Notes: generated by a model not told the origin, from the sequence alone. Positions 12,136-60,399 are shown, counted from the first letter of the stretch. The stretch is 64,000 bases of DNA from Octopus bimaculoides (GCF_001194135.2 NC_068988.1:93492614-93556613); one strand, 5' to 3'. Made by a program: numbers and translations.

Positions 12136-13259
12136 GACAATCTAATCACATAGGCGCAGGACTGACTGTGTGGTAAGAAGCTTGCCCCCCAGCCACAGGG
12201 TTCCGTTGCTCCAGAAATCATTGGAAGGATTCTGCTATTGTTATTGTATTGTTTATTCAGTTGTTTTTGGAGTCGTGTCTTGTATCCCTGTTCCAGTAAA
12301 GGAATGTTGTATAGCGTCTTTTGGTGATGCAGGGTGATTCTAATTGTAAAAATGGAAATGCACGTCCACGTAATTAAGTTTGATTTGAAATCACATGATT
12401 TTCAATTCGATTCCACGGCGCACCATGTTTGGAAGCTTCGAGTCCATCAAAGTCTCGTAACAGAAATTATATAGGTGGAAAGCATGCGGAAGCGGGCTGA
12501 ATGTTCTTGGGCGGTAGACCTATTTGCTGCTTGGTTCGACCCAGCCAGCTAGACCTTAGATGCCGTTGGTGGAGGGCTGAAAAGTCCTTAATGTAACGAT
12601 AGATTTCTCTCCTCCTCTCTCCAAAGTCGGAGAACCTGCGAAAAATGACGTATGTAGCCCTACCACCGTTGACAACTCGAGATGAAAAAATATAAACGAT
12701 TTAAGTAATGTATTGGCTTCAGATTTTGGCACAAGGCCAGCGATTTCGGGGGAGAGTTAAGTCGATTACATCGAACCCAGTGCTTAACTGGCATTTATTT
12801 TATCGACCTCGGCGGAATTTGAACTCGGAACGTAATGACGGACGAAATGCCGCTAAGCATTTCGCCCGACGTGCTTACGATTCTGCCAGCTCACCGCCGT
12901 AAGGATCCAATATATCATAGTTTTGAAAGGTGTTTAATAAACTAGAAACATGGGATGAGAGGTGGGGAAGATAACAAGAGTGTTAGCATCGCATATTAAC
13001 TAGTTTTCGTTATTGTTCTACAAACTAGAGAGGGGAGATGTTTCAGCTAAAATTTAATCCAAACGAACAGATTTAAACAATTACTCACACAAAAATTAGT
13101 TTATACTGCGTGTTGTTTGTTCCTCCAACACAAGTACTTTGTCATGTCAAAAGAAAATTATGAGATATAGACAGAGAGAAAAAGACAGAAAGAACAAGAC
13201 AGAGAGAAATAGACTGAAACAAAAAAAAAAACAACAGCAAACACTTGCGATGAGAATCT

Positions 13260-15108: not shown

Positions 15109-16774
15109 GCTTCAGTCACAACAGTGGCCACACTTTATAACTGTGGAAAACACCCCTTTACAACAATTATCGTAATCGAAAAGCAGACATTTTCATGGCA
15201 TAGAGATAACACGAATCTCAAATGGCCGCATCACATAGTATTGTCATATAATTCGTCACAATTCATTCATTTATGAAACGAGTGATGTATTATCAACAAT
15301 TGTTTCATTCATTTGAAGGAAGTTGCGTCTAAATCGCATCTTAGTTATTAGAGACGTGGGCTCTTCCTGGTGAGATGATTAGATGTACTACATGTGGACT
15401 TTGATTCTAGTGATGAATCAACGATCCAATGAATATGTTGCTCACTCACTGCTCATTCATGCAAGCGTTTGTTCATTTACTTAGTCTCTCAGACAATGAA
15501 AATCGGCGAATTTATGCTACTGGAGCACCAAATCATGATTTATGAGTTATTGTTTCCTGTATCGATAAGATTTACCAGTTTAGCTTATCTAACTGGAGAA
15601 TGAGTGTAAAATATTCCAGACGTATTACATATGACAGACTTTTGTCTTATCCAATTGCGCAGAGACAGAATTTCAAATGAAAATAGAATAGATATACATT
15701 TGTAATTTAAGAATATTTAAACAGTACTATTTTCTGTATTATTGCGAATAAATTTTTCGGCGCTTTATGCTCTGATTTCAAATCCCGGTGAGGCCAACTT
15801 TACTTTTTCTCGTTTCAAGATTGATAAAATAAAGTACCAGTCAGGCACTGGGATCGATAGAAGCGACTAAATCAGTCACTCTAAAACTGCAAAGCTTGTA
15901 TTAAATTTTATTACAAATAAATTCACAAGAAAGATATAGCTTCAGAAAAAATACTGGTTTCATATTTTGGGACAAGGCCAGCAATTTCGAGGGAAGGATT
16001 CAGTCGATTACATCGGCCCAAGTGCTCAACTGGTACTTATTTAGAAAGGATGAAAAGTAAAGTCGACCTCAGCGGAATTTGAACTCCGACGAAATGCTGC
16101 TAAGCATTTTCCCCCCACCCTGTTAAACGATTCTGCAATCTCGCCGCCTTATTCTCAACAAGTATTAAGATGTTCTTTAAATATGTTTTAAAAATTGTTT
16201 TTCAAAATTTAAATTTTCACACGGTAAATATAAAGTCGTTGAAAGTGTTTTAATTCTGACATCAAATAAATCTTTGGAAGACTTTTTTGTTGTTGTTGTT
16301 GTTGCTGAAGCATCGCTCGCTAAATATTATTTTTTGGTTGGTAGTTAAGCACACAGCTTTTCTTTGACTTTTGAAATGTGGGCCATTAAACTCTCCCACT
16401 TTGGATATTTATGTCAGGAATTTAAGACATACGCCATTAATTCGCATTTGCTTAAACCAAATTATTCAAAACAATAAAATTTCAGCCGAAACTTATGTCT
16501 AAAATTTAATTCCTTCTGAACAGAAATATGTTGTAAATTATTTTGTTTGGTAAAGACTGATTTGTATTTGACTCAAAATTGTTTTGAAGAACTCTAAAGC
16601 TATAGTGACTTATGAGATATTCACATTTTCAGATTATGTTGAAATATACAAATATGTACCGATGAATAATGAATCTTAATGTATGTATGTATGTATGTAT
16701 GTATGTATATATGTATATATGCATGTATGTATGTATGTATGTATGTATGTATGTATGTATGTATGTATGTATGT

Positions 16775-17489: not shown

Positions 17490-18305
17490 TTGAACCCAGT
17501 ACTCAAGCTAGTACTTATTTTACCGACCCGAAAGGACGAAAGGTAAAAGTCGACCCGGCGGTGTTTGAACTCAGGGTGTAAAGTCGGAAGAATTGTCGCT
17601 AAGTATTAATATTTTTCGTGGGACAGTAATAATTATGCCATCTCGCCATTCATTCAAAAAACTATTGTTAAGTGTTTCTGCTAGAAAGAATCCTCCCCAG
17701 CATGCACACCTGGATATTACTATCTTGGGTGCTTGAACTCATGGGGCAGGTTACCCGGTTACCCGGTAACCCTAGCATGTAAGTGACCGAGATCACAACT
17801 TTCTCCGTGAATGAGACGTCAGTTGGTCGCAGAGTTACCAAGTTACAGATGAGTGACGACGAACAATGTGAAATGAAGTGTTTTGCTCAAGAACCCAACG
17901 CATCACCTGGTCCAGGAATCGAAACCACAATCTTGTGATTTTGATTGCAACACCCTAACCACTTGGCCACATACTTTCGCGTTTGAAAGAAAAAAAAGAG
18001 GGGAAATACAGAATGCTTTTCTTTCTTTTAATCTTTCATCTTCTAACTGCTTTTAGTCGTTCGGGGCCCCAGGATTCTAGAATGTAGGTGCTTCGAACTC
18101 TGTACTTTTCGTTCAGCTAAAGAGGATGAAAGGAAAAGTGGACACGGATGGTATTTGGTTTCTGAAATTAAATGGAAGGGTCCAGTCACCACATAACATT
18201 TTACCTGAGACTGTACCAAGTTTAACATCTCTTTGACGCTGTGTGCGCATGCGTCTATTTATATATGGCACATTTATAGTTTCAATCAGCAGCTAACTTT
18301 CATCT

Positions 18306-18437
18306 CTGCACTCGCGTATGCTGTGTACCACCACACTACTAATGGTCTACAACATAACAACAGTGCTACATAAAAACTACCTTTTTACTGCTAGTGGTTT
18401 GCATCACAAAGTACTAGATTCGAGAAGGTAAACAAAA
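18306..18437 (+). ncRNA. Box H/ACA snoRNA-like element, copy 1 (full two-hairpin form)
   Basis: 5' hairpin gcact(18308)/agtgc(18366) with upper stem atgctgtg-acca/tggt-tacaacat. H box ACATAA 18368-18373. 3' hairpin tacctttt/gagaaggta + 4x4 pocket + ctagtggtttg/caaagtactag. ACA at 18432-18434, 14 nt below the pocket. Confidence 0.65.
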
Positions 18438-20227
18438 ATTCCATTTTACTTAGAATTTAAAAATAAACTATTGAACGTAAGCTGAAGATATATTATTCCA
18501 TTATGTGCAACAGAAACCGTATTTATTAAAATAACCATTTGCATATCAAACTTATTGGAAATACACCACGAATAAAGCAAATTTTCTGCGCTATTTGCCC
18601 AGAGATGTTATCTCTTATGAACGTACTATGTTTAGAAACAGAAATATATCCGTATCAGAGGAGAACTCGTCCAAGCAGAGCCCGTAAAAATGCTAGATGC
18701 GCATTTCTGTCTCATTGCGCTTTGTCAGCAGCATGTTCTCACTGGTAACTACAAGTCAAAATCCGTTACTATTGATATAGAAAAACGGTGTTTGAACATT
18801 CGTTGATGTTGCAATTAGCCACTCGGTTGAATAAATCCGTTTATTGCAACGGCAGCACTACTAAATAAATAGCCATCTCTGTATCACTCTTTCTTAGCCA
18901 AGATTTTCAATTTAAATTTCAATACTTCCAATATTTTCGTTAAACAGGATTTTCTTAAAACCACTTCATCACTGAATTTCTGCGAAATATTAATTCTTTG
19001 AAAGGTCGGACAGTTTGTTGAATATGACTATTTCGCAAACTATTCGCACAATTTCTCTCCTTCTTCGTAGTTCATTAATCTTTTCCAATCTTAAGATGAG
19101 AATTAATCACAGAAAAATTTGTGTATTAATATTTCCATAAAGAATATGAGCGAGAAAGCAAGGTGTGGTAAGTAGTTTGCCTTCCAGTGACATGGTTCTG
19201 CGTTCAGGCCCACGGCGTGCACTTTGGGCAAGAACGTACAGACGGACGAAATGCTATTAAACATTTTGCCGTTTCTATTAATATTGTTTTCGCATTTTGG
19301 CACAAGGCCAGCAATTTCAGTGGAGCGGGTATGTCGATTACATCGACCCCAGTGCTCAACTGGTTCTTATTTTATAGACTTCATCCCTCCCCCCCAAAAA
19401 ATGGCAGACAGTGTCGACCTCCACAGAATTCGAACTCGGAACATAAAGACAAACGAATTGTCACCAATAATTTTCACCGGCATGCTGTAAGGATTCGTCC
19501 AGCTCGCCGCCAACCATTTCAAGTAATATCAGTTTCAAATTTTGTCACAAGGCTAGCAATTTCGAAGGATGGAAGGAGGAAATCGATTACATCGACTCCA
19601 GTACTCAACTGGTACTTATTTTATCGACCCCAGTGCTCAGCTGGTACTTATTTTATCGACCCCGGAAGGATGAAAGGCAATGTCAACCTCGATGGAATCG
19701 TTTCGTGTAATATTAGCAGATTACGTGAGCTGAAAAATAAATACCTCGCAATAAAAAGTACAAGTCTATAACCGCTTCAATCAAGACACAAAGCAGACTG
19801 GATTCATCTCCAGTTGATCAATAAAACATCTGACAGGATATTTAGTCTTCGATTTGGTCAAATCATTTTTATGAGTAACATATTTACATTAGCAGTAGAA
19901 ACGGCACCGTTTCTTCAGTTCTTTAACAGCTTTCACTCTTTGAACTATGGCCACTCAAGGGCCTCTGTTTCCAGGATATAATTGATTTTTTTCTACCTGC
20001 GTTCTTATTTCTCAGTTGGTATTTACTTTATTAATTTAATGAGAATGAAAAGAAAAATGGGGATAGGCATGGGTGGGGGATTTGAATTCAGAACTTTAAG
20101 GCACGTAACTAAATAACAAAATATATTTTATTTCAGATTCTGTCTTCTTCCCACGAACGTGTATGTGCTTGTGTATTTGTGTGTATGTATGTATGTCATT
20201 GTTCAGTTTTCAAGACCAGATACCCTT

Positions 20228-20324
20228 CTGCATGCACAAACCTCTGCAGTGCTATACTAATTCTACCTCTCTACCTGCTAGTGTTTTGTGAAACAAAATA
20301 CTAGATTCTCGGAGGCAAACAAAA
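20228..20324 (+). ncRNA. Box H/ACA snoRNA-like element, copy 2 (shortened 5' hairpin)
   Basis: H box ATACTA 20254-20259. Hairpin ctagtgttttg/caaaatactag (20278-20304) with lower stem cctct/ggagg. ACA 20319-20321, 14 nt below the pocket. 5' hairpin reduced to about 25 nt. Confidence 0.5.
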
Positions 20325-20950
20325 AAATCTTATTACATTCAGCATTAAAGTATAGACCGAATGTCCACATTTACTCAAGTAGCAAGAATCTCGAAACGTC
20401 TTTGTATCTCTTCCGTCTATTAGGCCCAAAATCAACGTCGATCAATATGATCCAACGTATTTGTATCATGAGTGTAATGAGCCATGATTAATAAGCGCAT
20501 GAATGGTAACAGCTCGATGAACAGCTGCAAAGTCCTTTGGACAATTGGAAAAATAATCTTTCTCAATAAATTTGATGACAATGGCAAAACTAACGTATTT
20601 GTCAAGAAATGAACTTATCAATAATAAGAACAAATATTTTACGGAAAATATATTTTAATCGAACTTTTGAAATCAATGGAACTTTAGCTAGAAGTTGCTT
20701 ACTTGGACCCCAGTAGTTATATCTTGATTGGTGCTTATTGTGTGGAAGGGATTATCAAAGGATTAGTAGAGGGACTAGGAATGGTTTGATCCCAGAACCT
20801 AAAGCAACAACCAAACGCAACATCTTTATCCTCCACTCTACCAATTCTCTCAGCTATTTTGCCACGTGTCGTGTCTCAGCATGTACATGTGTGTTAGTAT
20901 CTGTGTGGTATATTGGACATTTTTACTTTCAAGACAAGATAATCCCATCC

Positions 20951-21074
20951 ATGCACAAGTCCACGTAGTGTACCACCTTTGGTTCACTCAGAACGACAGT
21001 GCTACAGTAACTCTACCTTTCTACCTGCTAGTGTTTTGTGTCACAAAATACTAGATTCTCGAAGGCAAACAATT
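20951..21074 (+). ncRNA. Box H/ACA snoRNA-like element, copy 3 (full two-hairpin form)
   Basis: 5' hairpin gcac/gtgc with upper stem agtg-t-acca/tggt-t-cact, 15 nt from H box ACAGTA 21004-21009. 3' hairpin ccttt/gaagg + pocket + ctagtgttttgtg/cacaaaatactag. ACA 21069-21071, 14 nt below the pocket. Confidence 0.65.
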
Positions 21075-21180
21075 CTATTACATTTAGTATTTAAGAATAA
21101 AAGTTTGGCTCCAGAGGCCAAACTTAGCCATGTAACAAGAATCTTGAAACCCCTTCTTTCCCTTATGTTATCATTTAGAC

Positions 21181-21433
21181 CAGCAGTTCTCTGCTACTTT
21201 TTACTTATGGACCCCTCTGATTTCTATTTTGTTCGGTTGGACCCTCATTACCACTCGATTTTAAAGAAACCCTATTATATTTTTCATAATTAAATATTAT
21301 TAGGAATTCTATTTAAAAATCGTTAAAATATTTTGTGTAGAGCAGAAGTACAACCAGTTTGTTGCACAGAAATTTTAACAACAAATCTTATGCGTAACTT
21401 GTGAGGGTCATATATGGATCCCAGTTGGTTACT
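21181..21433. mobile_element. Second, more decayed copy of the same hAT MITE
   Basis: Begins CAGCAGTTCTC and aligns along its length with 14483-14767 (e.g. ttttaaagaaac...aaaaatcgttaaaa...aaattttaaca.caa.atcttat). Right terminus eroded. Confidence 0.7.
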
Positions 21434-21455
21434 TATGCAATCTGCATCCGATATA

Positions 21456-21712
21456 CAGGCGGGGTGCAAAAGTAGGTATACAGTATGTATTACATCAATA
21501 TTTGTTATACTTAATTCATTAAGATTATTAGCTCATTAAATTAGTTAGCCTCGTTTTTGATAGTTTCAATGTCATTAATCATAAAAATACATTTATCATA
21601 ACTATAATAATACTTTTATCGTAACTTTTGATTTTTTTTTTTTTTTGATAAAAATGAGTATTGTACGTGTTTTCTTTTTTCATAACTGTATTCCAGCTTT
21701 TGCACCACCCTG
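21456..21712. mobile_element. Tc1/mariner-type MITE
   Basis: About 30-bp imperfect TIRs (CAGGCGGGGTGCAAAAGTAGGTATACAG / CTGTATTCCAGCTTTTGCACCACCCTG) flanked by TA on both sides; AT-rich non-coding interior. Confidence 0.75.
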
Positions 21713-22197
21713 TATAGTGCAAGCAGAGACAATAAGCATTACTTCTCAATGTAGTTGCTATTTTCATCTCTTACAGAGATTTGCTAATTCGCTACATTGT
21801 TTGTTAATTTGTGATATAGTCTTTCTTGATAAATTTGATGACTATTACCAAACTTAACATATTTTCACTAAATTAACTAATTAGTTATAGGAACAAACAT
21901 TTTAAGGAAAATATATTTTAATCAAACGATTGTGAAGTAATGAAATTTGGCCGGAAGTTGATAGCTTGAATTACTTCGTTACTTATTCGTCGACTGGTGC
22001 CTCTTGCTTGGAATGAAAGGTGAAATGTGTCAATGAACCTTAGAGGAATTTATTTCCAGAACCTAAACAGATATAACCAAAAACACCAACATCTTTATTC
22101 GCCACTCTACCAGTTCTATCAACTAATTACCAATGCCTGCGTGCGTGAGTATGTGTGTGTATATTGTACATTTTTATCTTCAAGACCAGATACCCTT

Positions 22198-22294
22198 CTG
22201 CATGCACAAACCTCTGCAGTGCTATACTAATTCTACCTCTCTACCTGCTAGTGTTTTGTGAAACAAAATACTAGATTCTCGGAGGCAAACATAA
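22198..22294 (+). ncRNA. Box H/ACA snoRNA-like element, copy 4 (identical to copy 2)
   Basis: H box ATACTA 22224-22229 and ACA 22289-22291. 113 nt (22179-22291) identical to 20209-20321. Confidence 0.5.
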
Positions 22295-22679
22295 AATCTT
22301 ATTACATTCAGCATTAAAGTATAGACCCAATGTCCACATTTACTCATGTAACAAGAATCTTGAAACCTCTTTGTTTCCTCTGTGTTAAGTCCAGGTCAAC
22401 CTCAACCAATGAGATATACAGAACCAAAGACTTTCCTCGTTCCTTTCATGAGAATCGTGTCTCTTTAATAAGGATATGAATTTCATTCGTTTCAGCGTTT
22501 GATTAAACTGGATATTCAAAGACTTCTTGATCCTATTTGTAATTAGTTCAGTTCTTGAGACTACACAAGTTCTGTCAACAATCAATCAACGTCATTTTCA
22601 AATTTCTCTTTACTTATACAGTTTGTGTACCGATGAATATTAGCACCAACATGACTGTGTATATAGAGAATTTTATACC

Positions 22680-22836
22680 GGCTTAGCTGTTTCGTAAGAA
22701 GTTTGCTTCTCAGCCACATGGTTCCAGATGCATACTTACTTCGTGGCTCCTTGGGCAAGTGTGTTCTACTATAGTCTCAGGTCGACCAAAGCCTTGTGAA
22801 TGGATTTAGTAGATGGAAACTGAAAGACGCTTATCG

Positions 22837-22886
<50 letters not shown>

Positions 22887-23100
22887 TGAGTGTGCTTGCG
22901 TGCGTGTGTGTCTGTGTTTGACCCCTACCACTACTTCACAAGTAGTGTTGGTTTGTTTACACCCGGTTCGGCAAAAATAACCGATATAATACGCACCAGG
23001 CTTACAAAAAGCACTGGCGGTGATGTGCTCAACGAAATATTCTTCAAGGAGGTGCCCCAACATGGCCGCAGTCTAATGACTGAAGCAAGTAAAAGATAAG
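22680..23100 (+). mobile_element. tRNA-derived SINE family B with internal (TA/TG)n microsatellite
   Basis: Consensus gtaagaagcttgc..ccacatggttc...ggcaccttgggcaagtgtcttctactatag...gtagacggaaactgaaagaagccc-(TG)n-...ggttcggcaaaa...ccccagcatggccgcagtc.aatgactgaaacaagtaaaaga. Other plus copies at about 4345-4620, 6085-6500, 11150-11350, 37430-37550, 43100-43320, 46480-46600, 61100-61410. Confidence 0.8.
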
Positions 23101-23567
23101 AAAATGTTAATTTGTTTCATTAGCGCAAATGGTAATTCCATGACATTGCTACAGAAGAACCGAACCAATTCCAACAAAACATTTCTATCGAAAGCAACGA
23201 ACCTTTAACTAACAGTTGATTACTTCGACCCCAGAACTTAATTCTTGACTTGGTGACTGGTGCTTATTCTCTGGAATGGAGGATGAAAACATAAGAGGAT
23301 CCAGGGGTGGGGGGAAATTCCATACCAGAATGCTAAGAGACATAATCAATTACCCCCAATAGGTTTTATCCTAGACTTTACCCCAATAGGTTTTATCCTA
23401 GACTACCTACCAATGTGTATAAGCACACGCGCGTGTGTATGTGAGTGCATATGTGTGTATGTGTGTGTGAGTGTGTGTGTATGTGTGTGCGTGCGTGTGT
23501 GTTTATGTGTGTGTGCGTGTGTGTATAAATTTTACATTATTATTTTGAAAACCGGATACTCTAGTTC

Positions 23568-23691
23568 ATGCACCTGTTTGTACAGTGTGCCGCATCTGGT
23601 CCACACTTAAACAACGGTGCTACATTAAACCTGCCTTTTTACTGCTAGGGTTTTGCATCACAAAATACTAGATTCGAGAAGGCAAACACAA
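23568..23691 (+). ncRNA. Box H/ACA snoRNA-like element, copy 5 (full two-hairpin form)
   Basis: 5' hairpin gcacc/ggtgc (compensatory vs gcact/agtgc in copy 1) with upper stem agtgtg-ccg/tgg-cacact, 14 nt from H box ACATTA 23622-23627. 3' hairpin tgccttttt/gagaaggca (compensatory vs tacc/ggta). ACA 23686-23688, 14 nt below the pocket. Confidence 0.65.
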
Positions 23692-24204
23692 AATCCAGGA
23701 TTTACGTAGACTCTACTGAATTCAACTTCCAGGTGTAACTATTTATCAAGAATCTCAAAAGCCCTGTTTAAAAAAAAAATCATGGGGTTATTTAAAACCA
23801 GCTCCAGCCTGACAGAATACTCGTATGATCAAATGCATTCCTTGTGTAATCACCATTCCCTCTCTTTAGATGTGTCATATATATCTAGGTATTTGATTAT
23901 CCAATATGAACTTTTCTTAAAATAGTAGATAGTGATTTGACACTTGTTATGTTCTGAATCTTTTGTTTTACTGTTTCGTAGGTCGAAATATCAACTGTTT
24001 GCAGTGAACTTTGCGGCCAATGTTATTATGATATGCAATATGAATATAGCTCGTTCACTGGATATGTTTTAACGATATATTGTGTAAAGACATATTTAAT
24101 GTTCTCCATAATACTTCAATGGTTTTGCTAGTTTCGTTCGCAAAAACGTCCATAGTACGATATGATAGGAAGCTGATGTTCGAAGCGTTGATAAACGCGT
24201 GGAT

Positions 24205-24760: not shown

Positions 24761-24806
24761 GAACTGAGTGCTTAAACTGTAAAACATTTATTTTATTTAT
24801 TTGTAG

Positions 24807-25235
24807 ATGTACCACTTATGTGTCATCGGAAGTTTCCAGCCTCGTTTTGGGATAGTGCATACCAAAGTTCGACGAGCAGTCTTCCACACAGTTTCCATTT
24901 TCCATCAGATGCTTATTTGAATTCATCCCTTTATGCAATGTCGGGTTTCCATAAAACATGGCCTTACTCACTTGCATCACAGACTCACAGCTACGCTCCG
25001 CAACCAGCTCACACCTTTTCTTATTCACCAATGGAAACCGCCGCCAGCCGATATAGTCCGCACTATACACCTTTTATGATGCAGTCTCCAGCCCAAATGA
25101 GCAGTCGGATTGAGTCGAGACATGGACAGTACGACGTCGGGAAATCGAGTGACCCATTTAGTTCAGCATATTATCCAGTACCTCGTTTAAGCGGAGAGAT
25201 GGGTTCCAGTTTCAATCTTGAATCGAGCGGTTTAG
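24807..25235 (+). CDS. vg: Internal coding exon of a vestigial / vestigial-like (VGLL1-3 class) transcription cofactor
   Basis: Acceptor ttttatttatttgtAG|AT at 24806/24807 and donor TTAG|GTCAGT at 25235/25236. The 429-nt, phase 1-1 exon is open throughout: (x)VPLMCHRKFPASFWDSAYQ...KTWPY...NLESSGL. RKFPASFWDSAY matches the PMSxRNFPPSFWNSxY motif that follows the TONDU domain in vestigial/VGLL proteins (recognised from memory, not by database search). S/P/Y/H-rich composition. Confidence 0.82.
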
Positions 25236-25689
25236 GTCAGTGCCATTAATATATTATTTTCGTTTCTTTTTTTTATTTTCATTATTTTATTAATTAAACG
25301 TGTAGATAATTCGTTTTTTTTCTCGGTGGAACTTGAAGTAGATAAAGCTACAAGTAACAGCGTGTAAATATTGAGTTTTAAAACCTTTTGAATTGGAAGA
25401 CGAACCTAGATTTCCTGTAAACATGACTGACGTCCAACCATTCTACCAAATCAACCCTTTGATTTTCTCAGTCTCTTTTAGAAGCATAGTGCTTACCAAC
25501 GAGAATTACGTCAAAGGAACTTAGGAATTTTGAGAGAGCGCGAAATAATTTGTTTTTATTGGTGAAACTCGAAGTAGATAAAGCTATAAATAATAGCGTG
25601 TAAGTCGAAAAAGTCGAGGGTCATCGAGGTATGTTGCAATACATATAAATGCGATTTAGGCAGGAATTCGACAGGAGGTAGTTATCTTT

Positions 25690-36030: not shown

Positions 36031-39000
36031 CTTAAGGTGTTGTCTCTTCATTTGTTTTGAGTGGAATCAAGGCTAATCTTCCTGCTTCAAGTGTTGAACT
36101 TCATATTCGAGTTCAAATCTGGTCGATACTAACTTAAACTTTTCACCCTCCTTGGTTCCCATAAAATGCGCACCAGTCATGTAATGGAGCCATTTCAATT
36201 GACTTAATCGCTCCCACCGTTTCGCCAGTCGAAAATATGTGCAACGGACAGAAAAGAACTCTTTTATTGGCGCTGGATTAAAGAACCAGTAGAGCACCCA
36301 ACACATACGCGACTTAATTGTCGTTGTTGTAGTTATTGCTGTGGTTGCCATTGTTATTGTTATCACTGCTGTTGTTGCTGCTGCCTGAACGGAAGTTCGA
36401 TGTTTCTATTTAAGATGAAGCAGTAGAACGGTTTCAACTAGAATTGACTCTTGAAATTCGAAACTTCTGAACTTGTTTATGAAGACTATCTTTGGCAAGT
36501 TTGGTAGAACAATTTGCATTGCTTACAGAATATAATTTCACGTCAAAAATGCTGCTCTATTGATACCTGCGATATTTAATTACAACGCTTTAGGCTCTAA
36601 TTTTAAATTTCAACAAAGGTAACGTCACCATTCCTCCATTCTAGATCCTGCAATCAACTGTACCTTCCTCGAAAGTTTCGGTATTTGTGTAAAAATTATA
36701 AACTAGTTTATCTTTTTTGTTTCCAGATCATTATTTCAGTCTTTCTTGATTTTTCTGGGTTTTTTTTTGTTTTTTGCAAAAAAATTTGTAGCAATAAGAA
36801 ATATCTTTTATCTTTTACTTGTTTCGCTCATTGGACAGCAGCCATGCAGGGTCACTACCGTGAAGGATTTAGTCAAACAAATCGGCCCAGTACTGATAAT
36901 TATTCGATCAGTCAGTGCCGCTGAAACGCTAAGTTACGAGGACGTAAACAAACTAGTACTGGTTGTCAAGTGATAGCATGGGTTCAAGCACAAACACAAA
37001 GACACACACACACGCGCGCATATATATCTATATATCTACACACACACACACTGGGCCATTGTACCTTCACTTTTTATGGCGTAACCAGCAATGGAAAGGC
37101 AATGTCCATAATTATTTATCAAAACCACCGAAACTTTTGGAAGGAAATTATGCTGAAACCGAAGGCCTGGTTCGAATTCTTTCGACCGAAGGAACTCTGC
37201 TAAAAATGTTCAACGACTGGAGAATTTGTATTAAACCAGCGGAAACAAAGGCACTGAAATTCATTGACTGTAACACATTCTTACAATCACGATAAGCCGG
37301 ATTATCTTCTGTGGTTTTATTAGAAGAAACACATCTGTTTTATAAAGATAAAATTTTGTTTTAAAACTCGCAGGAAAAGTTATTGAAGCCATATACGCAC
37401 CTGTTATTTTTATATTTGGACTCAGATGCAGGTATTGTTATGTAGTTAAGAGGCTCGCTTTGCAATACCGCGGTTTCAGGTTCAGTCCCATTGCACGGCA
37501 ATTTGAGCAAGTGTCTTTTACAATAACCCAAGGCAGTTCAAGTATGAGACGTGCCAAAACGTCCCAATCTCTACCACGTTCATTCTGCTCTGGTTCATAG
37601 AGTAAAGAATCTTATTACTTCGGGTGCTTGAAGATAAATGCCGTGTATCGTTAGTTGGCATCCCTAAGGACCTAATCTATATTCCAGGGACCTGCTTTTC
37701 TGCCAGTTTTTTTCCTTTAATATGAACGATTCGCAAATTTTATTAAAAATTATACATTTTGTCTTTTAATATGTTCAATTAAAAAACTGAGATAAGATAG
37801 TTTGTTAAAACAGTTAAAGTAAAATACTTTAAAGCAATATTTTATATGTGATTAATTAGTCGCGTGTTGTTGCTGTTGTTGTTGTTTGTGTAGCCCCAGG
37901 ATAGCTTTGATCGAGCAGATCTATGGCACCCAGGAAATCTCCACCGAACGACTAAGCGCGACAAGTTGTGAGCTGTTTATTACATTGCCACGATGGCTGC
38001 AACATAGGGATAATGACTTTGAATTAGTTTAGAAGTTAGGGGAAAAGGCAGAAAGATTGAGTTAGCATTTCCCTGAGCCCCACTGCAATTTCGAGCATAT
38101 TCAATAATTTAACTCGGAACCTTGGTGCCACTAAATTAAGGTAATACGAGACAGCTAACGCAGTCAGTAAAGCTACTCGACTAGACTCTGTTTCTAATCT
38201 CTTCGTTGAAGAAGCCTGCTGTTTGAGTTTAGCGTGTGAAAGAAAGCGAAAACTATTAACCATTAGAATCAAAACCTTATACCACGGACATTTTCCATTT
38301 TGTAAGAATGGCTCACATATACATAAGGAAAATATGTGCAATTCATATCAATTGCAGGGTTTATAATCATATGCGAAACCACAATGCTATCCACGCCAAT
38401 ATCAATAATTCTTAAGGCGGCGAGCTAGCAAAATCTTTAGCACGCCGGACGAAATACTTAGCGGCATTTCGTCCGTCTTTACGTTCAGAGTTTAAATTCC
38501 GCCGAGGTCGACTTTACCTTTCATCCTTTCGCACTGGGGGTTGATGTAAACGACTTTACTCCACTCCCCAAAATATTTCAGGCCTAGTTCTTTCTAATTT
38601 TGGCACAACGCCAGCAATTCTGAAAAGGATGGGCAAGTCGATTACATCGACTCCTGTGCTCCATTAATACTTTATTTTATCGACGCTGGAAGGATAAAAG
38701 ACAAAGTCGAATTCGGCGGGATTTGAACTCAGAACGTAGCGACAGGTGAAATACCGCTAAGCATTTCGCCCGGTGTGCTAACGATTCTGCCAGCTCGCCG
38801 CCATAGTGTTTACTTTTATCAATATGATGACAAATAGAATCGAATCCGACAGACTGAGAATTCCGAATATAAGGAAATAAAATCAAATAGTTGATCGGTA
38901 CCTCTTTGAATACTTTGTATGCCTCAACGAAATAACAACCAAGGAAATGGAATGAAATATTTTATCGGATTTTCCACAGATTATTTGTCATCCACCGACG

Positions 39001-51180: not shown

Positions 51181-53184
51181 TCTCAACACCGGTTGTCAAA
51201 CGGTGCGGAATGGACAGACACAGACACACTCGATGAGCTTCCACACAGTTTCTGTCTGCTAAATTCCCTCACAAGGCATCGGTTAGTCCGGGGTCTATTG
51301 TAGAAGAAACCTGGTCAAGGTGCCGCACAGTGGGACTGAAACCGAAACCACATGGCTGCAAAGCAAATTCCTTAAACACACATGCCGTGCCTGGGTTTGC
51401 TTTCTTTATATCTTGATTTCAAATCTTGGCACAAAGCTAGCAATTTCGGGCAGAAGATAAGACCCCGGTGTTCAAATGACACTTATTTTATCAGCCCCGA
51501 AGGGATGAAAGGCGAAGTCGACCTCGGTAGAATTTGAACTCAGAAAATAAAGACGGACGAAATACCACAAAGCATTTTCTCCGGCGTGATAACTATTCTG
51601 CCAGCTAGCCGCCTTCTGTTCTATATATATTTTTTTAAAAAATGGAAAGACAAACTGCAATTTTAATGCGACAGATATCAGTAAAACGCTGATCAACGCA
51701 ATTCAAAGATAGTAAAAATATTTTTCGAAGCCTTTTAATAGAACTAAAACCAGCTGTAAACAGCAACGAAGCCCCAACTCCTTGNNNNNNNNNNCATTAT
51801 TTTACCGTTTTCACTCCCCAAAGTTTCTTGTACGATAAAAACGAAATAAAACAAAATAAAATAAAAATAAAACAAAACTACATTTAAAATCGGAGCCCTC
51901 ACTTTATTTTCTATTGACGGTGAAGAAATTGGCTGAAGTGGATGAGTGGAGACTTCAAAGTTGTCTTCACACGTGATTTGAATTAGCTCTTATTTTGTGC
52001 TCTTCTTCCAAACTGACGAAACACCTGTTTCCAATGATACGTAAAATTTCATCCCCACCCCCCCACGCTCAACACAAATCTTACAAAGAATTGCTTTTCT
52101 CTTCCACTTCTTTCTTGGTAATCTCCGTATTTGGGAAATATCTCCTGCAAGCCCACATGTCGTTCATGCAACAGTTCCTATTTTAATTGAAATTCCATGG
52201 TTCTGTTTGTAGTGGACAGATTCAGTGTTGCTTTTCCACCGTTGGATATAAGAACCGTTGGATTCCGTTAATAAAAAAGTTATGCGTTTGTTCTCCTCGC
52301 GTTCAATAAAAAGAAAGTATAACATGTATTTCGAAACACTTACCTAATCGTCCATTAAGGAGACATTAAGAAGAGAAGTGCTTAAGTAGAGTGTCGTGGA
52401 AGAATTAGTTGAAGAGTCAAAGAGAATCAATCGTAAAACTAATGGATTCATTCCAAATTAATTTGCTGGTCAATATTGCGTAGAGTAAGTTAGTGGAGAC
52501 TGTTTTAGACACGGAACATGGTAACTGATCACGGAAAATTCTTCCATGTAAGCATCGTCATCGTTGTCGTCGTCATTGCTGTTATGTCATCATCATCATC
52601 ATCATCATCATCGATAATAGCATAGTAGTTACCCAACAAAATAAGCCGACCAAGCCAATATAAATTCCTGGCGTGATATTTTTTTTCATTTATTTACCCA
52701 AACATATTTTCTTCTACCCCACCACGACCCCCACCCCCCGATTAAATCCGTTCCAAACCATCAGGTGTCTCTTTTATAAAACATTATACTCTCTTCTCTT
52801 GTTAAAGTGCCGCGCAGATGGAAGATACACGGCGCCTTTGTAACTTGTAATATTTTCTTCATAGTCTTAGGCCTTAAGTATGAATCTTATCTGCGAGACT
52901 GAATTAAATTACAATAGACTTACTTGGAAATACTTCAGATGCAGCACATGGCTTTAGAAGTAATTATTTATCATAATTATTGCTGAAAAAACTTTGAAGA
53001 ATGTTGGAGAAAGGTATTTTAATTCTTGTAAGTTATTCAAGGGAAGTATGGGCTCACACTTCATGAGGGCTCTACGCAAACGCATACATAGATACGTTCA
53101 TATATGCACACACTTATTCCTGCATACACATACGCACAAGTGGTAGGACCAATTGAGTTACATTGTTAATATTTGTATATTTCT

Positions 53185-53620
53185 AAGGCGGTGGGAGCTG
53201 GCAGAATCGTTAGCACGCCGGGTGAAATGCTTAGCGGTATTTCGTCTGCCTTTATGTTCTAAGTTCAAATTCCGCCGAGGTCGACTTTACCTTTCATCCT
53301 TTCGGGGTCGATTAAATAAGTACCAGTTACGCACTGGGGGTCGATATAATCGACTTAATCCCTTTGTCTGTCCTTGTTTGTCCCCTCTATCTTTAGTCCC
53401 TTGTGAGCAATAAAGAAATAAGAAATGTTAGCATGCCGGGCGAAATGCTTAACAGTATTTCGTCTGTCTTTACGTTCTGAGTTCAAATTCCGCTGAGGTC
53501 GACTTTGCCTTTCATCCTTTCGAGGTCGATAAATTAAGTACCAGTTGGTAACTGGGGTCGATCTAATCGACTGGCTCCCTCACCCAAAATTTCTGGCTTT
53601 GTGCCTTGAGTAGAAAAGAA
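53185..53620 (+). mobile_element. tRNA-derived SINE family A, two tandem plus-strand copies
   Basis: A-box/B-box-like head (TGGCAGAATCG...GAGTTCAAATTC) and core CCTTTCATCCTTTCGGGGTCGATAAA.TAAGTACCAG. Other plus copies at about 5353-5550, 15770-15890, 38414-38560, 63045-63170. Confidence 0.8.
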
Positions 53621-54550
53621 TATTTCTGAGTTCAAATTCAACCTCAGTGGTAATCTGAAATATTAGAAATTTCCACTACCAGTGGCCTAGCGTGTAAAAA
53701 CTTTAGTCAATAGACTTTATATTATTCATATAAATACAGTGTACATTTAAACGCATAAGAGGTATCCATCATAAGACTACCTGCACGCTAGAGAGGACAG
53801 TTAAATTCCAAACCACTATTAAGGATAAAATTTCGAAGAGAATGTAAATGTCTTTACATTTCACTCCCTTCGAAATTTTAGATAGATAGATAGATAGATG
53901 CGCGCGTGCGAGCACACACACATACGATTTTTGTTGTTGCTGAGGTTGTCATTTACTGCTCTACAAGATAAGGTCGAGGGACGATTAAACGGTAACTGTT
54001 AATTTCATCAGTCTCAACTGGCCGATCACTTTCTATACAGTATCGAGACTGTAATTAGTCAATTTAACGCCTGGAAGGCTTGCTTTATAAACAGGACGGC
54101 ATGAGATTTTTAGCCGACTAATAAATTTAATCTGAATTAGTTAGATACTTGGTTAATGCAGAAAGCTGCCAATTTCAAGTCGGCTGAGTAAACGAATGAA
54201 ATTAGAAGCCAAGTTGTTTGTAAAAGACCACAGAATCGTTGTCATATTGTGTATAAATAGAGCGACTGCCTTTGCTAAAGCGTTGGCGCCTTCGACCCGG
54301 AGAAGAATAAACATGGATTATCTCTCCATGAAAACATGTCAAAGAGGATGCAGTTTTATTTCTCTTTCACCCGTTTTAATCTCTCTCTCTCGCTCCTCTC
54401 TCTCTCTCTCTCTCTTTCTCCTTCTATCTCTTTCTCCTTCTATCTCTTTCTCTTCCCCATCTCTCTATCTATTTCACCGAGTCTCTATTTACCACAAGAT
54501 TTACGTAAGCATGTGTATATAAGTGGGCGTATGTATGTGTGTGTGTGTGC

Positions 54551-55986: not shown

Positions 55987-56866
55987 GGGTGGTTGAAAAG
56001 TAAGCAGGCATTAAAAATTGGTAATAAAATCCATATTCCTTTTACAAATTTATTGAAACAAATGATACATGTTCTTTATTACATAGGGAAATGTAAGTGT
56101 ATCTTCATATTTCAACGTAAGCACTGGTGGCGTCAACCAGTTTCCTCAAACAGCCAGGGGTTAAATGAACAATCTTCTGAACGACGTTGTCTGGGATATC
56201 ATTGAGAACCTCCTCAATCCGTGTCTCCAAGTTCCCCCAGTGTGCGAGGTTTTGTCTTGTACACCTCTTTTGTGTAACCCCAGAGGTAAAAATCACATGG
56301 AGTGAGATCTGGGCTTCTTTGAGGCCATTCCGTATTCCATTCTGCGGTCCCAGTCTTCAGGTTTTAGCTCCTGCACGTAATGGGGTTTCCACGGACGAAA
56401 ATTCAATTTTGATGCAACACCGTACGCATTGTGTCTTGTTAGTCCACTTTCACGAGCTACTTGACATGTTGATTTTTGTGGGCTGCGATTAAACATTTCC
56501 TGTTGCCACGTTCTCCGCTGATCGGGATGTAGCTGGACGGCCACTTCTTGTATAGTTCATAGAGTCCGTGGTCATCAGCTTTGCATGATAACTTTTTATT
56601 GTCTCCGGACGTAGTGTTCCATGCACGCCAACATCTCTGAGCTAAAACAATGGTATTCCACACTTCACAGCGTGCTGCTATCTTAACTCGTTCCTGAACA
56701 GTTAAGCGACCGGTCACCTGGAAAATAAGAAATAAGAAATAAGACAGTAAGAAAATAAGAGATCCCCATTAGTGTTGTCTGTTTAAAAAATGTTTTGCTT
56801 TGACTTCAGGGATATTATAAATTCTATAAACAGTTTTTAATGCCTAGTTACTTTCCACCCACCATG
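55985..56866 (-). mobile_element. Internally deleted Tc1/mariner (rosa/DD41D-like) transposon with transposase pseudogene
   Basis: TIRs CAGGGTGGTTGAAAAGTAAGCAGGCATT / AATGCCTAGTTACTTTCCACCCACCATG with TA flanks. Minus-strand frames give RLTVQERVKIAARCEVWNTIVLAQRCW (N-terminal HTH), RSPQKSTCQVARESGL...KPHYVQELKPEDWDRR, and EWPQRSPDLTPCDFYLWGYTKE..VYKTKP (third catalytic D motif). The region with the first two Ds is missing; frameshifts present. Confidence 0.85.
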
Positions 56867-58943: not shown

Positions 58944-60399
58944 GTATAAATTGGCCCACCGTCGATTACGATGACGAGTGTTCTAGTTGATCCAATCAAA
59001 GAAAACCCTGCCCTGGAAGTTACCCGGATGCATACCCTTAACATAGTTCTCAGGGAGACTCAGCAAGGTACAGAATATGAGAACGCCGGAATTTGAACTC
59101 AGAACGTAAAGACAGACGAAATACCGCTAAGCATTCCGCCCTGCGCGCTAACGTTTCTTATTTCTTTATTGCCCACAAGGGGCTAAACATAGAGGGGACA
59201 AACAAGGACAGAAAAAGGGATAAAGTTGATTATATCGACCCCAGTGCGTAACTGGTTCTTAATTTATCGACCCCGAAAGGATGAAAGTGAAAGTGACCTC
59301 GGCGGAATTTGAACTCAGAACGTAACGGCAGACGAAATACCACTAAGCATTTCGCCCGGCATGGTAACGTTTCTGCCAGCTCACCGCTTTAAGTTGCCAA
59401 AATATTGCAAAACTTTTGATTCGATCTAGTGCCATACAAAACAGAAATTTACGGACCCCACCCCTACAACATCCCACCTTTACCTTATATATTCTTCATG
59501 TATTGACCCCTATAAGCAAGGTGGCGAATTAATAGAAACGCGAAAGAAACAGACTGTCTGTTTTGTGGTATTTCTAACGGCTTTCTGCACTCGAGATTGA
59601 AATTTTAGCGTGGTCCACTTCCACTTCATGCTTTCTGGGAGGTTAAATAAAGATACAAACCAGTTAAGTACCCAGGAAGATTCTAGGTTTTCTTCTCCCT
59701 CTTTTCCTCCCACCCTGGCTTTCTCTCACTCCCCTGCCACAAAAGCAAACACACCGTCACAACACGAAAGTTTCGGTGTAGTGGATAATTAGAGAGGATG
59801 AAAACGAGGAACATTTCAAAGACCAGAAGGGAATCATTCGGCCATGACACATAGCAGTCATTCTTGAAAGGAAATATTTCATTTGCTTACATCTTGTTCA
59901 AGTTCCTTTCTTTATTTCTTGTATAAAGTATTTTATTTGTAATATATTTATTGTTTTCACGTACATATGTATACACACACGCAAACACACACGTACACAC
60001 ACACACACATTCACACAAACACACACATTCAAATACACCCGCGCACACATACATAAACGCACATTCAAACGCGCGCATGCGTTCATACATTCACGCATAT
60101 TTAATTATATGAAGTCTTCCTGCAAGGAAAGAGCTGGTTTCTAACTACGATACACAGCTCTATCGTTGGAATGTTGATAACAAAAACAATGTCCCATTTC
60201 GAAGTAGAGAAGAGTCTTGCATATTATTATTGTTCCGCGTACAGATTATATTTGTAATGTGCGTGTTGGCTGGTGGGTTTCTTTCTGATATATGCATGCA
60301 TGTACGTATGTGTGGATGGTGGATAATAGGATTCTAAAGTAGCTGTTCAACTGTGAGCTGTGCACTGCAAAAGCGAACTCAATACTAACCACAAAATAG

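What the first reader, a model, noticed from the sequence alone, without database searches (positions are those of the whole stretch)
18306..23691. Array of five diverged box H/ACA snoRNA-like RNAs immediately upstream of the vestigial exon
Seen: five homologous elements found nowhere else in the window (18306, 20228, 20951, 22198, 23568), all on +. Each has hairpin - ANANNA - hairpin with internal pocket - ACA. The H boxes are ACATAA, ATACTA, ACAGTA, ATACTA and ACATTA: the three A residues are invariant while the N positions vary. In all five, exactly 14 nt separate the upper stem of the 3' hairpin from ACA, and the 5' pockets of copies 3 and 5 lie 14-15 nt from the H box. Stems show compensatory changes (gcact/agtgc vs gcacc/ggtgc; tacc/ggta vs tgcc/ggca; cctct/ggagg vs ccttt/gaagg) and G-U pairs that work only on the + strand. 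Full copies are 124-132 nt. Established: this is the dyskerin-bound H/ACA guide architecture and its 14-16-nt spacing rule. Inference: a tandemly amplified snoRNA family hosted in a developmental-cofactor intron, or in an unannotated non-coding host transcript. That is unusual, since metazoan snoRNAs are mostly one per intron in housekeeping genes.
Basis: partly seen in the sequence, partly recalled or inferred. Interest (0 to 1): 0.85.

Follow-up and report, generated by a model that had tools for sequence, protein, structure and literature searches.

The report
Five tandem H/ACA snoRNA-like elements
Five related 95-132-base elements in a 5.4-kb stretch just upstream of a vestigial-like exon have the fold, boxes and spacing of pseudouridine-guide (H/ACA) small nucleolar RNAs. 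They are most likely a lineage-specific snoRNA gene cluster, a known kind of thing, with no proof yet of expression or target.

Summary
Exactly five homologous elements lie on the + strand at 18306-18437, 20228-20322, 20951-21074, 22198-22292 and 23568-23691, and nowhere else in the window.

- **Fold:** the three full copies fold unconstrained into hairpin, hinge, hairpin, tail (z -2.6 to -3.8).
- **Boxes:** each has ANANNA in the hinge, with the A residues invariant and the N positions variable. ACA is invariant, and similarity ends right after it.
- **Spacing:** 14 nt separate the 3' upper stem from ACA in all five.
- **Conservation:** the hinge-3' hairpin-ACA block is 74-88% identical between distant copies, while flanks sit at the ~60% shuffled baseline.
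- **Background:** a generic H/ACA filter run over both strands passes only these five plus two unconvincing loci.

Weaknesses:
- Copies 2 and 4 have lost the 5' pocket.
- Covariation is too thin to be significant.
- No Rfam family matches.
- No orthologues could be retrieved.
- No rRNA target beats shuffled guides.
- The host intron could not be verified.

Verdict: a probable new H/ACA snoRNA family amplified by tandem segmental duplication (confidence about 0.6). Clustered intronic H/ACA genes are already known in Drosophila, so interest is moderate.

The parts
18306..18437 (+). Copy 1, subfamily A, full length 132 nt. H box ACATAA at 18368-18373; ACA at 18432-18434. It has a 10-nt insertion in the apical loop of the 5' hairpin and one G-G mismatch in the 3' upper stem.
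   Evidence: Fold z -3.84; alignments; covariance model 95.4 bits; passes the H/ACA filter with 14-nt spacing.
20228..20322 (+). Copy 2, subfamily B, 95 nt. The 5' hairpin is reduced to a 7-bp stem without a pocket (about 30 nt deleted). H box ATACTA at 20254-20259; ACA at 20319-20321. The 3' pocket is 7 x 6 nt.
   Evidence: covariance model 102.2 bits.
20951..21074 (+). Copy 3, subfamily B, full length 124 nt. H box ACAGTA at 21004-21009; ACA at 21069-21071. The 3' pocket is 7 x 6 nt. The 5' upper stem ends 15 nt before the H box.
   Evidence: Fold z -2.62; covariance model 101 bits.
22198..22292 (+). Copy 4, subfamily B, 95 nt, truncated like copy 2. It is about 99% identical to copy 2 in the core and 91% over 244 nt. 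H box ATACTA at 22224-22229; ACA at 22289-22291.
   Evidence: covariance model 101.6 bits.
23568..23691 (+). Copy 5, subfamily A, full length 124 nt. H box ACATTA at 23622-23627; ACA at 23686-23688. It has one G-A mismatch in the 3' upper stem.
   Evidence: Fold z -3.56; covariance model 94.3 bits. Weak end-to-end Rfam alignments to two H/ACA families: 17 bits (E 2.9) and 13 bits (E 3.2), both far below their gathering scores.
24787..25249 (+). Coding exon of a vestigial-like (VGLL) gene on the same strand, 1.1 kb downstream of copy 5. It is the presumed downstream exon of the host intron.
   Evidence: The ORF at 24818-25249 starts MCHRKFPASFWDSAYQ. Pfam TEADIR3 (TEAD-interacting omega loop) matches at E 0.0031, 18.1 bits, below its cut-off of 26. 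It is 80% identical to P0001 from a Logan contig.

Best explanation
The five elements are genes, or recent derivatives of genes, for a lineage-specific family of box H/ACA small nucleolar RNAs.

Inferred mechanism, from established H/ACA biology:
1. They are transcribed on the + strand as part of a longer precursor, most likely the intron that precedes the vestigial-like exon at 24787.
2. Each two-hairpin unit binds the dyskerin/Nop10/Nhp2/Gar1 proteins through its H and ACA boxes.
3. That protects it from exonucleases, leaving a ~125-130-nt RNA that ends 3 nt after ACA.
4. The internal loop of the 3' hairpin pairs with a target RNA and places a uridine 14 nt from ACA for conversion to pseudouridine.

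The inner pocket nucleotides (5' ..CUG, 3' AUUC..) are invariant in all five copies. The predicted target core is therefore 5'-GAAU-U-N-CAG-3'. It extends to GAGAAU-UN-CAGGUAG for copies 2-4 and to (CUC)GAAU-UN-CAGU(AAAAA) for copies 1 and 5. The 5' hairpin pockets have diverged completely between copies 1, 3 and 5, and are deleted in copies 2 and 4.

The array arose by tandem duplication of whole 0.75-1.9-kb segments. Each segment carried an old SINE fragment, a (TG)n tract and the snoRNA unit. There was later a short conversion or duplication between copies 2 and 4.

Shown here: sequence, fold, boxes, spacing, strand and selective conservation. Inferred: transcription, processing, protein binding and guide activity.
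For: - **Fold:** unconstrained minimum-energy folds of copies 1, 3 and 5 give hairpin, hinge, hairpin, tail with z -2.6 to -3.8. The minus strand is weaker. RNAalifold on the three full copies gives the same 35-pair consensus.
- **H box:** ANANNA sits 1 nt after the 5' hairpin. Its three A residues are invariant and all three N positions vary.
- **ACA box:** ACA is invariant 1-2 nt after the 3' hairpin, and the alignment breaks down directly after it.
- **Spacing:** 14 nt in all five 3' hairpins, and 14-16 nt in the three 5' hairpins, by direct count.
- **Selective conservation:** the 3' domain is 74-88% identical in distant pairs, against 54-74% for flanks and a shuffled baseline near 60%. 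For copies 1 and 5 the flanks are at noise while the 3' domain is 88%. The copy 3 and copy 4 units align at 69% over 640 nt, but their 3' domains are 88% identical.
- **Where the changes fall:** the single-stranded inner pocket bases are invariant, whereas the apical loop, the hinge spacer and the tail after ACA all vary. Indels respect the structure: a 10-nt insertion inside an apical loop in copy 1, and a deletion in copies 2 and 4 that keeps a closing stem.
- **Pairing changes:** three pairs show changes on both sides, and three one-sided changes go to G-U.
- **Specificity:** these are the only loci among both strands of the window that pass a generic filter with both hairpins.
- **Context:** they are on the same strand as the flanking exon, and 124-132 nt is a typical metazoan H/ACA length.
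Against: - No Rfam H/ACA family reaches significance. The best matches are 17 and 13 bits (E about 3), for copy 5 only.
- No target in eukaryotic rRNA is better than shuffled pockets give. Only microbial-eukaryote rDNA was available for that test.
- Covariation is not significant with four independent sequences. The 3' upper stem gained a mismatch in copy 1 and another in copy 5.
- Copies 2 and 4 lack a 5' pocket.
- In copies 1 and 5 the minimum-energy 3' pocket is only 4 x 4 nt.
- There are no expression data, and no orthologues were found.
- The host transcript is unverified.
- My filter was designed after I had seen the elements.
Confidence: 0.6

Rival explanations
1. These are decaying relics. 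One H/ACA-like or otherwise structured unit was copied by tandem segmental duplication, and the copies are now pseudogenes. The higher similarity of the core reflects local gene conversion, not selection.
For: Whole units of 0.75-1.9 kb were duplicated, flanks included. Copies 2 and 4 share a 244-nt tract at 91% that looks like conversion or a recent secondary duplication, and both lack most of the 5' hairpin. Copies 1 and 5 each carry a new mismatch in the 3' upper stem. No target and no family match were found.
Against: Conversion would have to be confined repeatedly to the same ~80-110 nt in every pair, including copies 1 and 5, which lie 5.2 kb apart and whose flanks are at noise. Substitutions avoid the box A residues, ACA and the inner pocket bases, and concentrate in the box N positions, the apical loop and the tail. 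That pattern is what selection predicts and what conversion does not.
Confidence: 0.2
2. It is a structured RNA element of another kind that does not bind dyskerin. Examples would be a repeated cis-acting structure in the vestigial-like pre-mRNA that affects splicing or editing, or a new small RNA class. The H and ACA motifs would then be incidental in A-rich single-stranded stretches.
For: The hinge and tail are A-rich, so ANANNA is easy to find there by chance; my rough estimate is tens of percent for the hinge alone. No target was found and no Rfam family matches.
Against: The A residues of the H box and the ACA are invariant while their neighbours vary. Conservation stops right after ACA. 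The 14-nt spacing holds in all five copies and 14-16 nt in the 5' hairpins. The total length and the two-hairpin layout match the H/ACA class.
Confidence: 0.12
3. It is part of a transposable element or satellite. The core would belong to a repeat family that is common elsewhere in the genome.
For: Each unit sits next to an old SINE-like fragment and a (TG)n tract. The window is rich in SINE copies: 19 blast matches in about a dozen places, on both strands.
Against: None of the SINE copies elsewhere in the window carries the core. All five copies share one orientation within 5.4 kb. Unit flanks are colinear, which fits segmental duplication rather than independent insertion. No matches were found in the metagenome or viral collections.
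Confidence: 0.05
4. It is a cluster of microRNA precursors, with the 3' hairpins processed by Drosha and Dicer.
For: Weak, non-significant Rfam alignments of the 3' hairpin to miRNA families (E 0.39-5.3). Cephalopods are known for many novel miRNAs; this rests on my own knowledge.
Against: The 3' hairpin is 5-9 bp, then a 4x4 to 7x6 internal loop, then 11-12 bp. That is about 24 stem positions, against the roughly 33-35 bp that pri-miRNA processing needs (established knowledge). The large symmetric loop sits where the miRNA duplex would be. The conserved 5' hairpin, hinge and ACA have no role in a miRNA.
Confidence: 0.03

Closest known systems
[quoted passage not shown] 2004 J Mol Biol 341:669, cited in PMC5932544)
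   Same: Several H/ACA snoRNA genes lie close together on one strand within intronic sequence. Related isoforms arise by local duplication.
   Different: Here the units are 0.7-1.9 kb apart and were duplicated together with SINE and microsatellite flanks. The presumed host is a developmental cofactor gene. Expression and targets are unknown, and two copies are truncated.
Canonical metazoan box H/ACA snoRNAs, for example Rfam SNORA68 (RF00263)
   Same: A length of 124-132 nt, the hairpin-H box-hairpin-ACA layout, pockets 14-16 nt from the boxes, and an intronic sense-strand location. Copy 5 aligns end to end with the SNORA68 model.
   Different: The score is 13 bits against a gathering score of 43 (E 3.2), so this is no evidence of homology. 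No conserved rRNA target was found. There is no match to any of the 4227 Rfam families.
Mammalian tissue-specific orphan snoRNAs in non-housekeeping or repeated hosts: the SNORD115/116 arrays, and the brain-specific H/ACA RNA HBI-36/SNORA35 in the HTR2C intron. This comparison rests on my own knowledge and was not tested here.
   Same: Tandemly repeated or tissue-specific-host snoRNA genes without an obvious rRNA target.
   Different: SNORD115 and SNORD116 are box C/D RNAs, one per intron of a repeated non-coding host. Nothing here shows tissue-specific expression or a host exon between copies.

Membership tests
Box H/ACA snoRNA (class) | Hairpin-hinge-hairpin-tail secondary structure on the transcribed strand. 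| tested here: met
   Minimum-energy folds of copies 1, 3 and 5 and the RNAalifold consensus. Copies 2 and 4 keep only a 7-bp 5' stem.
Box H/ACA snoRNA (class) | H box ANANNA in the hinge, directly after the 5' hairpin. | tested here: met
   ACATAA, ATACTA, ACAGTA, ATACTA and ACATTA. The A positions are invariant and all N positions vary.
Box H/ACA snoRNA (class) | ACA box after the 3' hairpin, 3 nt from the mature 3' end. | tested here: inconclusive
   ACA is invariant 1-2 nt after the lower stem, and similarity ends right after it. The mature 3' end cannot be determined from sequence.
Box H/ACA snoRNA (class) | Pseudouridylation pocket whose top lies 14-16 nt upstream of the H or ACA box. 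| tested here: met
   The 3' hairpins give 14 nt in all five. The 5' hairpins give 16, 15 and 14 nt in copies 1, 3 and 5, by direct count. In the minimum-energy folds the pocket is 7x6 nt in copies 2-4 and 4x4 nt in copies 1 and 5.
Box H/ACA snoRNA (class) | Bipartite complementarity of the pocket to a target RNA flanking an unpaired U-N. | tested here: inconclusive
   I scanned 120 eukaryotic rDNA loci taken from metagenomes. No site scores better than shuffled pockets: real guides score at most 7.5 at conserved sites, and 14% of shuffles reach 8 or more. No cephalopod rRNA or snRNA was available.
Box H/ACA snoRNA (class) | Accumulates as a ~130-nt RNA bound by dyskerin, Nop10, Nhp2 and Gar1. 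| not testable with these tools
   No expression or protein-binding data are available.
Any curated Rfam H/ACA family | Covariance-model score at or above the family's gathering threshold. | tested here: not met
   No hits at gathering thresholds on the whole window. The best per-copy hits are TtnuHACA23 at 17 bits against 100, and SNORA68 at 13 bits against 43. Copy 3 has none.
scaRNA (Cajal-body H/ACA RNA) | CAB box (UGAG) in an apical loop. | tested here: not met
   The apical loops read GUC, GAA and CAUCA in the 3' hairpins, and CCUU, GCAUCU and a 12-nt loop in the 5' hairpins. None contains UGAG.
miRNA precursor | A largely continuous stem of about 33-35 bp from the basal junction to the apical loop. 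| tested here: not met
   The 3' hairpin has about 24 stem positions, interrupted by a 4x4 to 7x6 internal loop. The Rfam miRNA hits are non-significant.
Dispersed repeat (SINE or other transposable element) | Many copies, both orientations, unrelated flanks. | tested here: not met
   There are five copies in one orientation with colinear flanks, and none next to the other SINE copies in the window. Genome-wide copy number could not be tested.

The most novel reading that the evidence does not exclude
This is a cephalopod-lineage, tandemly amplified family of orphan H/ACA guide RNAs. Its expression would be tied to a developmentally regulated vestigial-like host gene. Its conserved 3' pocket (target core GAAU-U-N-CAG) would direct pseudouridylation of a non-ribosomal RNA, while the fast-diverging 5' pockets explore new targets. 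That would be an invertebrate counterpart of the mammalian tissue-specific orphan snoRNA arrays.
Probability: 0.12. Interest if true: 0.7.

Novelty: new member of a known kind. Interest (0 to 1): 0.4.

Why it matters
If expressed, these would be unannotated snoRNA genes of a family absent from Rfam, in a group of animals whose snoRNA complement has been catalogued mainly by homology to known families. The giant squid genome, for example, was reported with 41 H/ACA loci found that way (PMC6962438).

The cluster shows snoRNA paralogues at several stages. The 3' guide is held constant. The 5' guides have diverged. Two copies have lost the 5' pocket. That makes it a compact case for studying how guide RNAs are born and decay.

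It would also add an example of H/ACA genes inside a tissue-specific developmental gene rather than a housekeeping host.

It does not change what is known about how H/ACA RNAs work.

Tried and rejected
- **Rfam:** the whole window at gathering thresholds gave 0 hits. The region 18000-24000 at E up to 10 gave only microsatellite artefacts such as SCARNA7, mir-297 and sno_ZL1 on (TG)n tracts. Per-copy scans gave nothing significant.
- **Orthologue hunts:**
  - An exact-pattern scan for the conserved 3' hairpin found nothing in metagenome contigs or viral contigs.
  - A protein-space search with the translated open frame across the core found nothing.
  - The only homologue of the neighbouring exon is a 1483-nt Logan contig from a distant relative. 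It aligns at the exon only (73.5% nucleotide identity) and does not reach the array.
- **Target prediction:** I fetched 120 eukaryotic rDNA loci using the conserved 18S 3' end and scanned them with all seven pockets. Hits were locus-specific, G-U-rich or no better than shuffled guides. The best conserved candidate is 5.8S GAAU|UG|CAG, with 8 Watson-Crick pairs, which is within the null range. A scan of the window itself, including the vestigial-like exon, found nothing notable.
- **Upstream TATA-like motif and downstream CAAGAATCTTGAAAC block:** I considered these as promoter or processing signals. I rejected that because flank identity between copies 3 and 4 (67-74%) is uniform over 600 nt, which is what neutral decay of a duplicated segment gives.
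- **Upstream host exon:** a search for the TDU-domain exon found none in the window.
- **tRNA scan:** no tRNA genes in the window.
- **Other filter hits:** the loci at 12768 and 40900 do not fold as H/ACA RNAs.

Full report
**Observation.**
The region 18306-23691 holds five homologous elements, all on the + strand: 18306-18437 (c1), 20228-20322 (c2), 20951-21074 (c3), 22198-22292 (c4) and 23568-23691 (c5). A sensitive blastn of the cores against the whole window finds only these five. So does a covariance model of the 3' domain run with filters off on both strands: the five score 94-102 bits, and the next + strand hit scores 14.7 bits at E 0.39.

**Anatomy.**
- Unconstrained minimum-energy folding of c1, c3 and c5 gives a 5' hairpin, a single-stranded hinge, a 3' hairpin with an internal loop, and a short tail. 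The z-scores are -3.84, -2.62 and -3.56 against dinucleotide shuffles.
- c2 and c4 have the same 3' hairpin (z -3.4 and -4.3), but their 5' hairpin is reduced to a 7-bp stem.
- The reverse strand folds less well (z -1.3 to -2.6).
- RNAalifold on the three full copies returns the same two-hairpin consensus, with 35 pairs.
- The hinge carries ANANNA 1 nt after the 5' hairpin. Its three A residues are invariant and all three N positions differ among copies.
- ACA is invariant 1-2 nt after the 3' lower stem. The three bases after it, and everything further downstream, differ.
- The last base of the 3' upper stem is 14 nt from ACA in all five copies. In the 5' hairpins the corresponding distance to the H box is 16, 15 and 14 nt in c1, c3 and c5, by direct count.
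- No apical loop contains a CAB box (UGAG).

**Is it more than chance?**
I wrote a generic filter: ANANNA, then 45-75 nt forming one unbranched hairpin of -12 kcal/mol or better with a pocket 13-16 nt from a following ACA. I ran it over both strands of the window. Seven loci pass. Five are these elements. The two others, at 12768 and 40900, have no stable 5' hairpin, and one lies inside a SINE; neither folds as an H/ACA RNA. The filter was written after I had seen the elements, so this is a rough false-positive rate and not a p-value.

**Conservation.**
The elements sit in larger duplicated units.
- The c3 and c4 units align over 640 nt at 69%.
- c2 and c4 share only a 244-nt tract, at 91%.
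- c1 and c5 align only across the core.
- Segment by segment, the block from the 3' strand of the basal stem through the H box and 3' hairpin to ACA+3 is 74-88% identical in every distant pair.
- Upstream and downstream flanks are 54-74% identical, against a shuffled baseline of about 60% under the same alignment scheme.
- For c1 against c5 the flanks are at noise while this block is 88%.
- Within the block, the variable columns are the H-box N positions, the hinge spacer, the apical loop, the outer pocket and lower-stem positions, and the tail. The inner pocket bases (CUG on the 5' side, AUUC on the 3' side), the box A residues and ACA never vary.
- Indels respect the structure: a 10-nt insertion within the 5' apical loop of c1, and in c2 and c4 a ~30-nt deletion that removes the inside of the 5' hairpin but leaves a closing stem.
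- Two subfamilies are visible. A is c1 and c5. B is c2, c3 and c4.

**Covariation.**
- Three pairs change on both sides while staying paired: A4 columns 20-71 (A-U, G-C, and A-C in three copies), A4 columns 24-67 (U-A and C-G), and the fifth pair of the basal 5' stem (U-A, C-G, and A-A).
- Three pairs of the 5' upper stem change on one side to G-U.
- Two G-U pairs are invariant.
- c1 has a G-G mismatch and c5 a G-A mismatch in the 3' upper stem.
- With four independent sequences the measures do not clearly exceed the shuffle controls. For example, 51 of 500 shuffles reach the observed covariation score.
- So covariation is compatible with the fold, and together with the G-U pairs it argues for the + strand. 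On its own it is not proof.

**Comparison with known families.**
- Rfam 15 gives no hit at gathering thresholds anywhere in the window.
- At E up to 10 it gives no hit on the elements; the listed hits are (TG)n artefacts.
- Scanned alone, c5 aligns end to end with two H/ACA models: TtnuHACA23 at 17 bits (E 2.9) and SNORA68 at 13 bits (E 3.2). Both are far below their thresholds. c3 gives none.
- The elements therefore fit the H/ACA class by architecture but belong to no curated family.

**Target.**
From the 3' pocket, the expected target is GAGAAU-UN-CAGGUAG for c2-c4 and (CUC)GAAU-UN-CAGU(AAAAA) for c1 and c5. The shared core is GAAU-UN-CAG.

No cephalopod rRNA was available. I fetched 120 eukaryotic rDNA loci from metagenome contigs through the conserved 18S 3' end and scanned them with all seven pockets. 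Strong-looking hits were locus-specific and G-U-rich. Hits at conserved sites were weak. At conserved sites the real guides score at most 7.5, while 14% of shuffled guides reach 8 or more.

The best conserved candidate is 5.8S GAAU|UG|CAG, with 8 Watson-Crick pairs, and it is within that null range. The window itself, including the neighbouring exon, holds no notable match. The target question is open. The RNA may be an orphan, or may target lineage-specific rRNA, snRNA or other RNA.

**Context.**
The ORF at 24818-25249 (+), 1.1 kb downstream of c5, begins MCHRKFPASFWDSAYQ.
- It matches Pfam TEADIR3, the TEAD-interacting omega loop of vestigial-like proteins, at E 0.0031 and 18.1 bits, below the cut-off of 26.
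- Its only database homologue is P0001, 80% identical, on a 1483-nt Logan contig that aligns at the exon only.
- The exon that would encode the TDU domain is not in the 24.8 kb upstream.

The intronic, sense-strand position is therefore plausible but unverified.

The upstream TATA-like motif and the downstream CAAGAATCTTGAAAC block are no better conserved than the rest of the duplicated flanks. I do not read them as signals. c1 and c5 contain a run of five T residues, which argues against Pol III transcription (established knowledge of Pol III termination).

The SINE-like repeat that is frequent in the window gives 19 blast matches in about a dozen places on both strands. It never carries the core.

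**Interpretation.**
The most likely reading, at about 0.6, is a lineage-specific box H/ACA snoRNA family amplified by tandem segmental duplication. The 3' guide module is under purifying selection in all copies. The 5' module has diverged in c1, c3 and c5 and is lost in c2 and c4.

Rivals:
- Decaying pseudogene copies kept similar by conversion (0.2).
- A structured RNA of another kind (0.12).
- A repeat family (0.05).
- A miRNA cluster (0.03). The stem is too short and is interrupted by a large internal loop.

**Novelty and interest.**
Clusters of H/ACA snoRNA genes within introns are described in Drosophila (Huang et al. 2004, cited in PMC5932544). Cephalopod snoRNAs have so far been catalogued by homology to known families (PMC6962438). 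This would be a new family of a known kind, in a host gene that is not the usual housekeeping type. It is worth a check in small-RNA data. It is not a surprise to a specialist, so I score interest at 0.4.

Noticed in passing
window 19269-19700, and matches in about a dozen further places, e.g. 2525-2722, 12711-12897, 15950-16042, 38417-38801, 51401-51612, 53195-53624, 59225-59387: A SINE-like repeat (...GGCACAAGGCCAGCAATTTC...GTCGATTACATCGACCCCAGTGCTCAACTGGTACTTATTTTATCGACC...) is scattered over the window in both orientations. Two adjacent copies are inserted between c1 and c2 and explain the long c1-c2 spacing. ARAGORN calls no tRNA in the window.
   Followed up: partly
window 20040-20110, 20700-20800, 21960-22060, 23220-23340 and 18120-18170: Each snoRNA-like unit has, 150-350 nt upstream, a strongly diverged fragment resembling the same SINE family, followed by a (TG)n/(TA)n tract. 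The ancestral duplicated segment therefore already contained a SINE insertion and a microsatellite.
   Followed up: partly
window 20179-20408 against 22149-22377: c2 and c4 share a 244-nt tract at 91% identity (about 99% in the core). Their wider flanks are not similar to each other, although c4's flanks match c3's at 69%. This looks like a short gene-conversion or secondary duplication event inside the array.
   Followed up: partly
window 22756-22889 and 23415-23529: Rfam E-value hits to SCARNA7, mir-297, mir-3149 and sno_ZL1 fall entirely on (TG)n microsatellites. They are low-complexity artefacts.
   Followed up: yes
window 56187-56717, minus strand: Two overlapping ORFs (for example ...RRTWQQEMFNRSPQKSTCQVARESGLTRHNAYGVASKLNFRPWKPHYVQELKPEDWDRRMEYG) look, from memory, like a degraded mariner-type transposase. 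Pfam gave no hit at E up to 0.1.
   Followed up: partly
window 13.5-14.0, 31.8-32.1, 33.9-35.0, 39.8-40.3, 43.5-43.9, 47.7-48.6, 54.5-55.0 and 57.3-57.8 kb: The window has 3343 N bases in several runs, usually flanked by microsatellites. The assembly is a gapped draft, so an exon or a further copy could be hidden in a gap. None of the gaps lies inside 18.0-25.3 kb.
   Followed up: no
L121 (Logan ERR12945500 contig, 1483 nt) against window 24787-25242: The only retrievable relative of the vestigial-like exon is 73.5% identical at the nucleotide level over the exon and cannot be aligned in the intron. The source is therefore a distant species, and close relatives of the window's organism are absent from the searchable collections.
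   Followed up: yes
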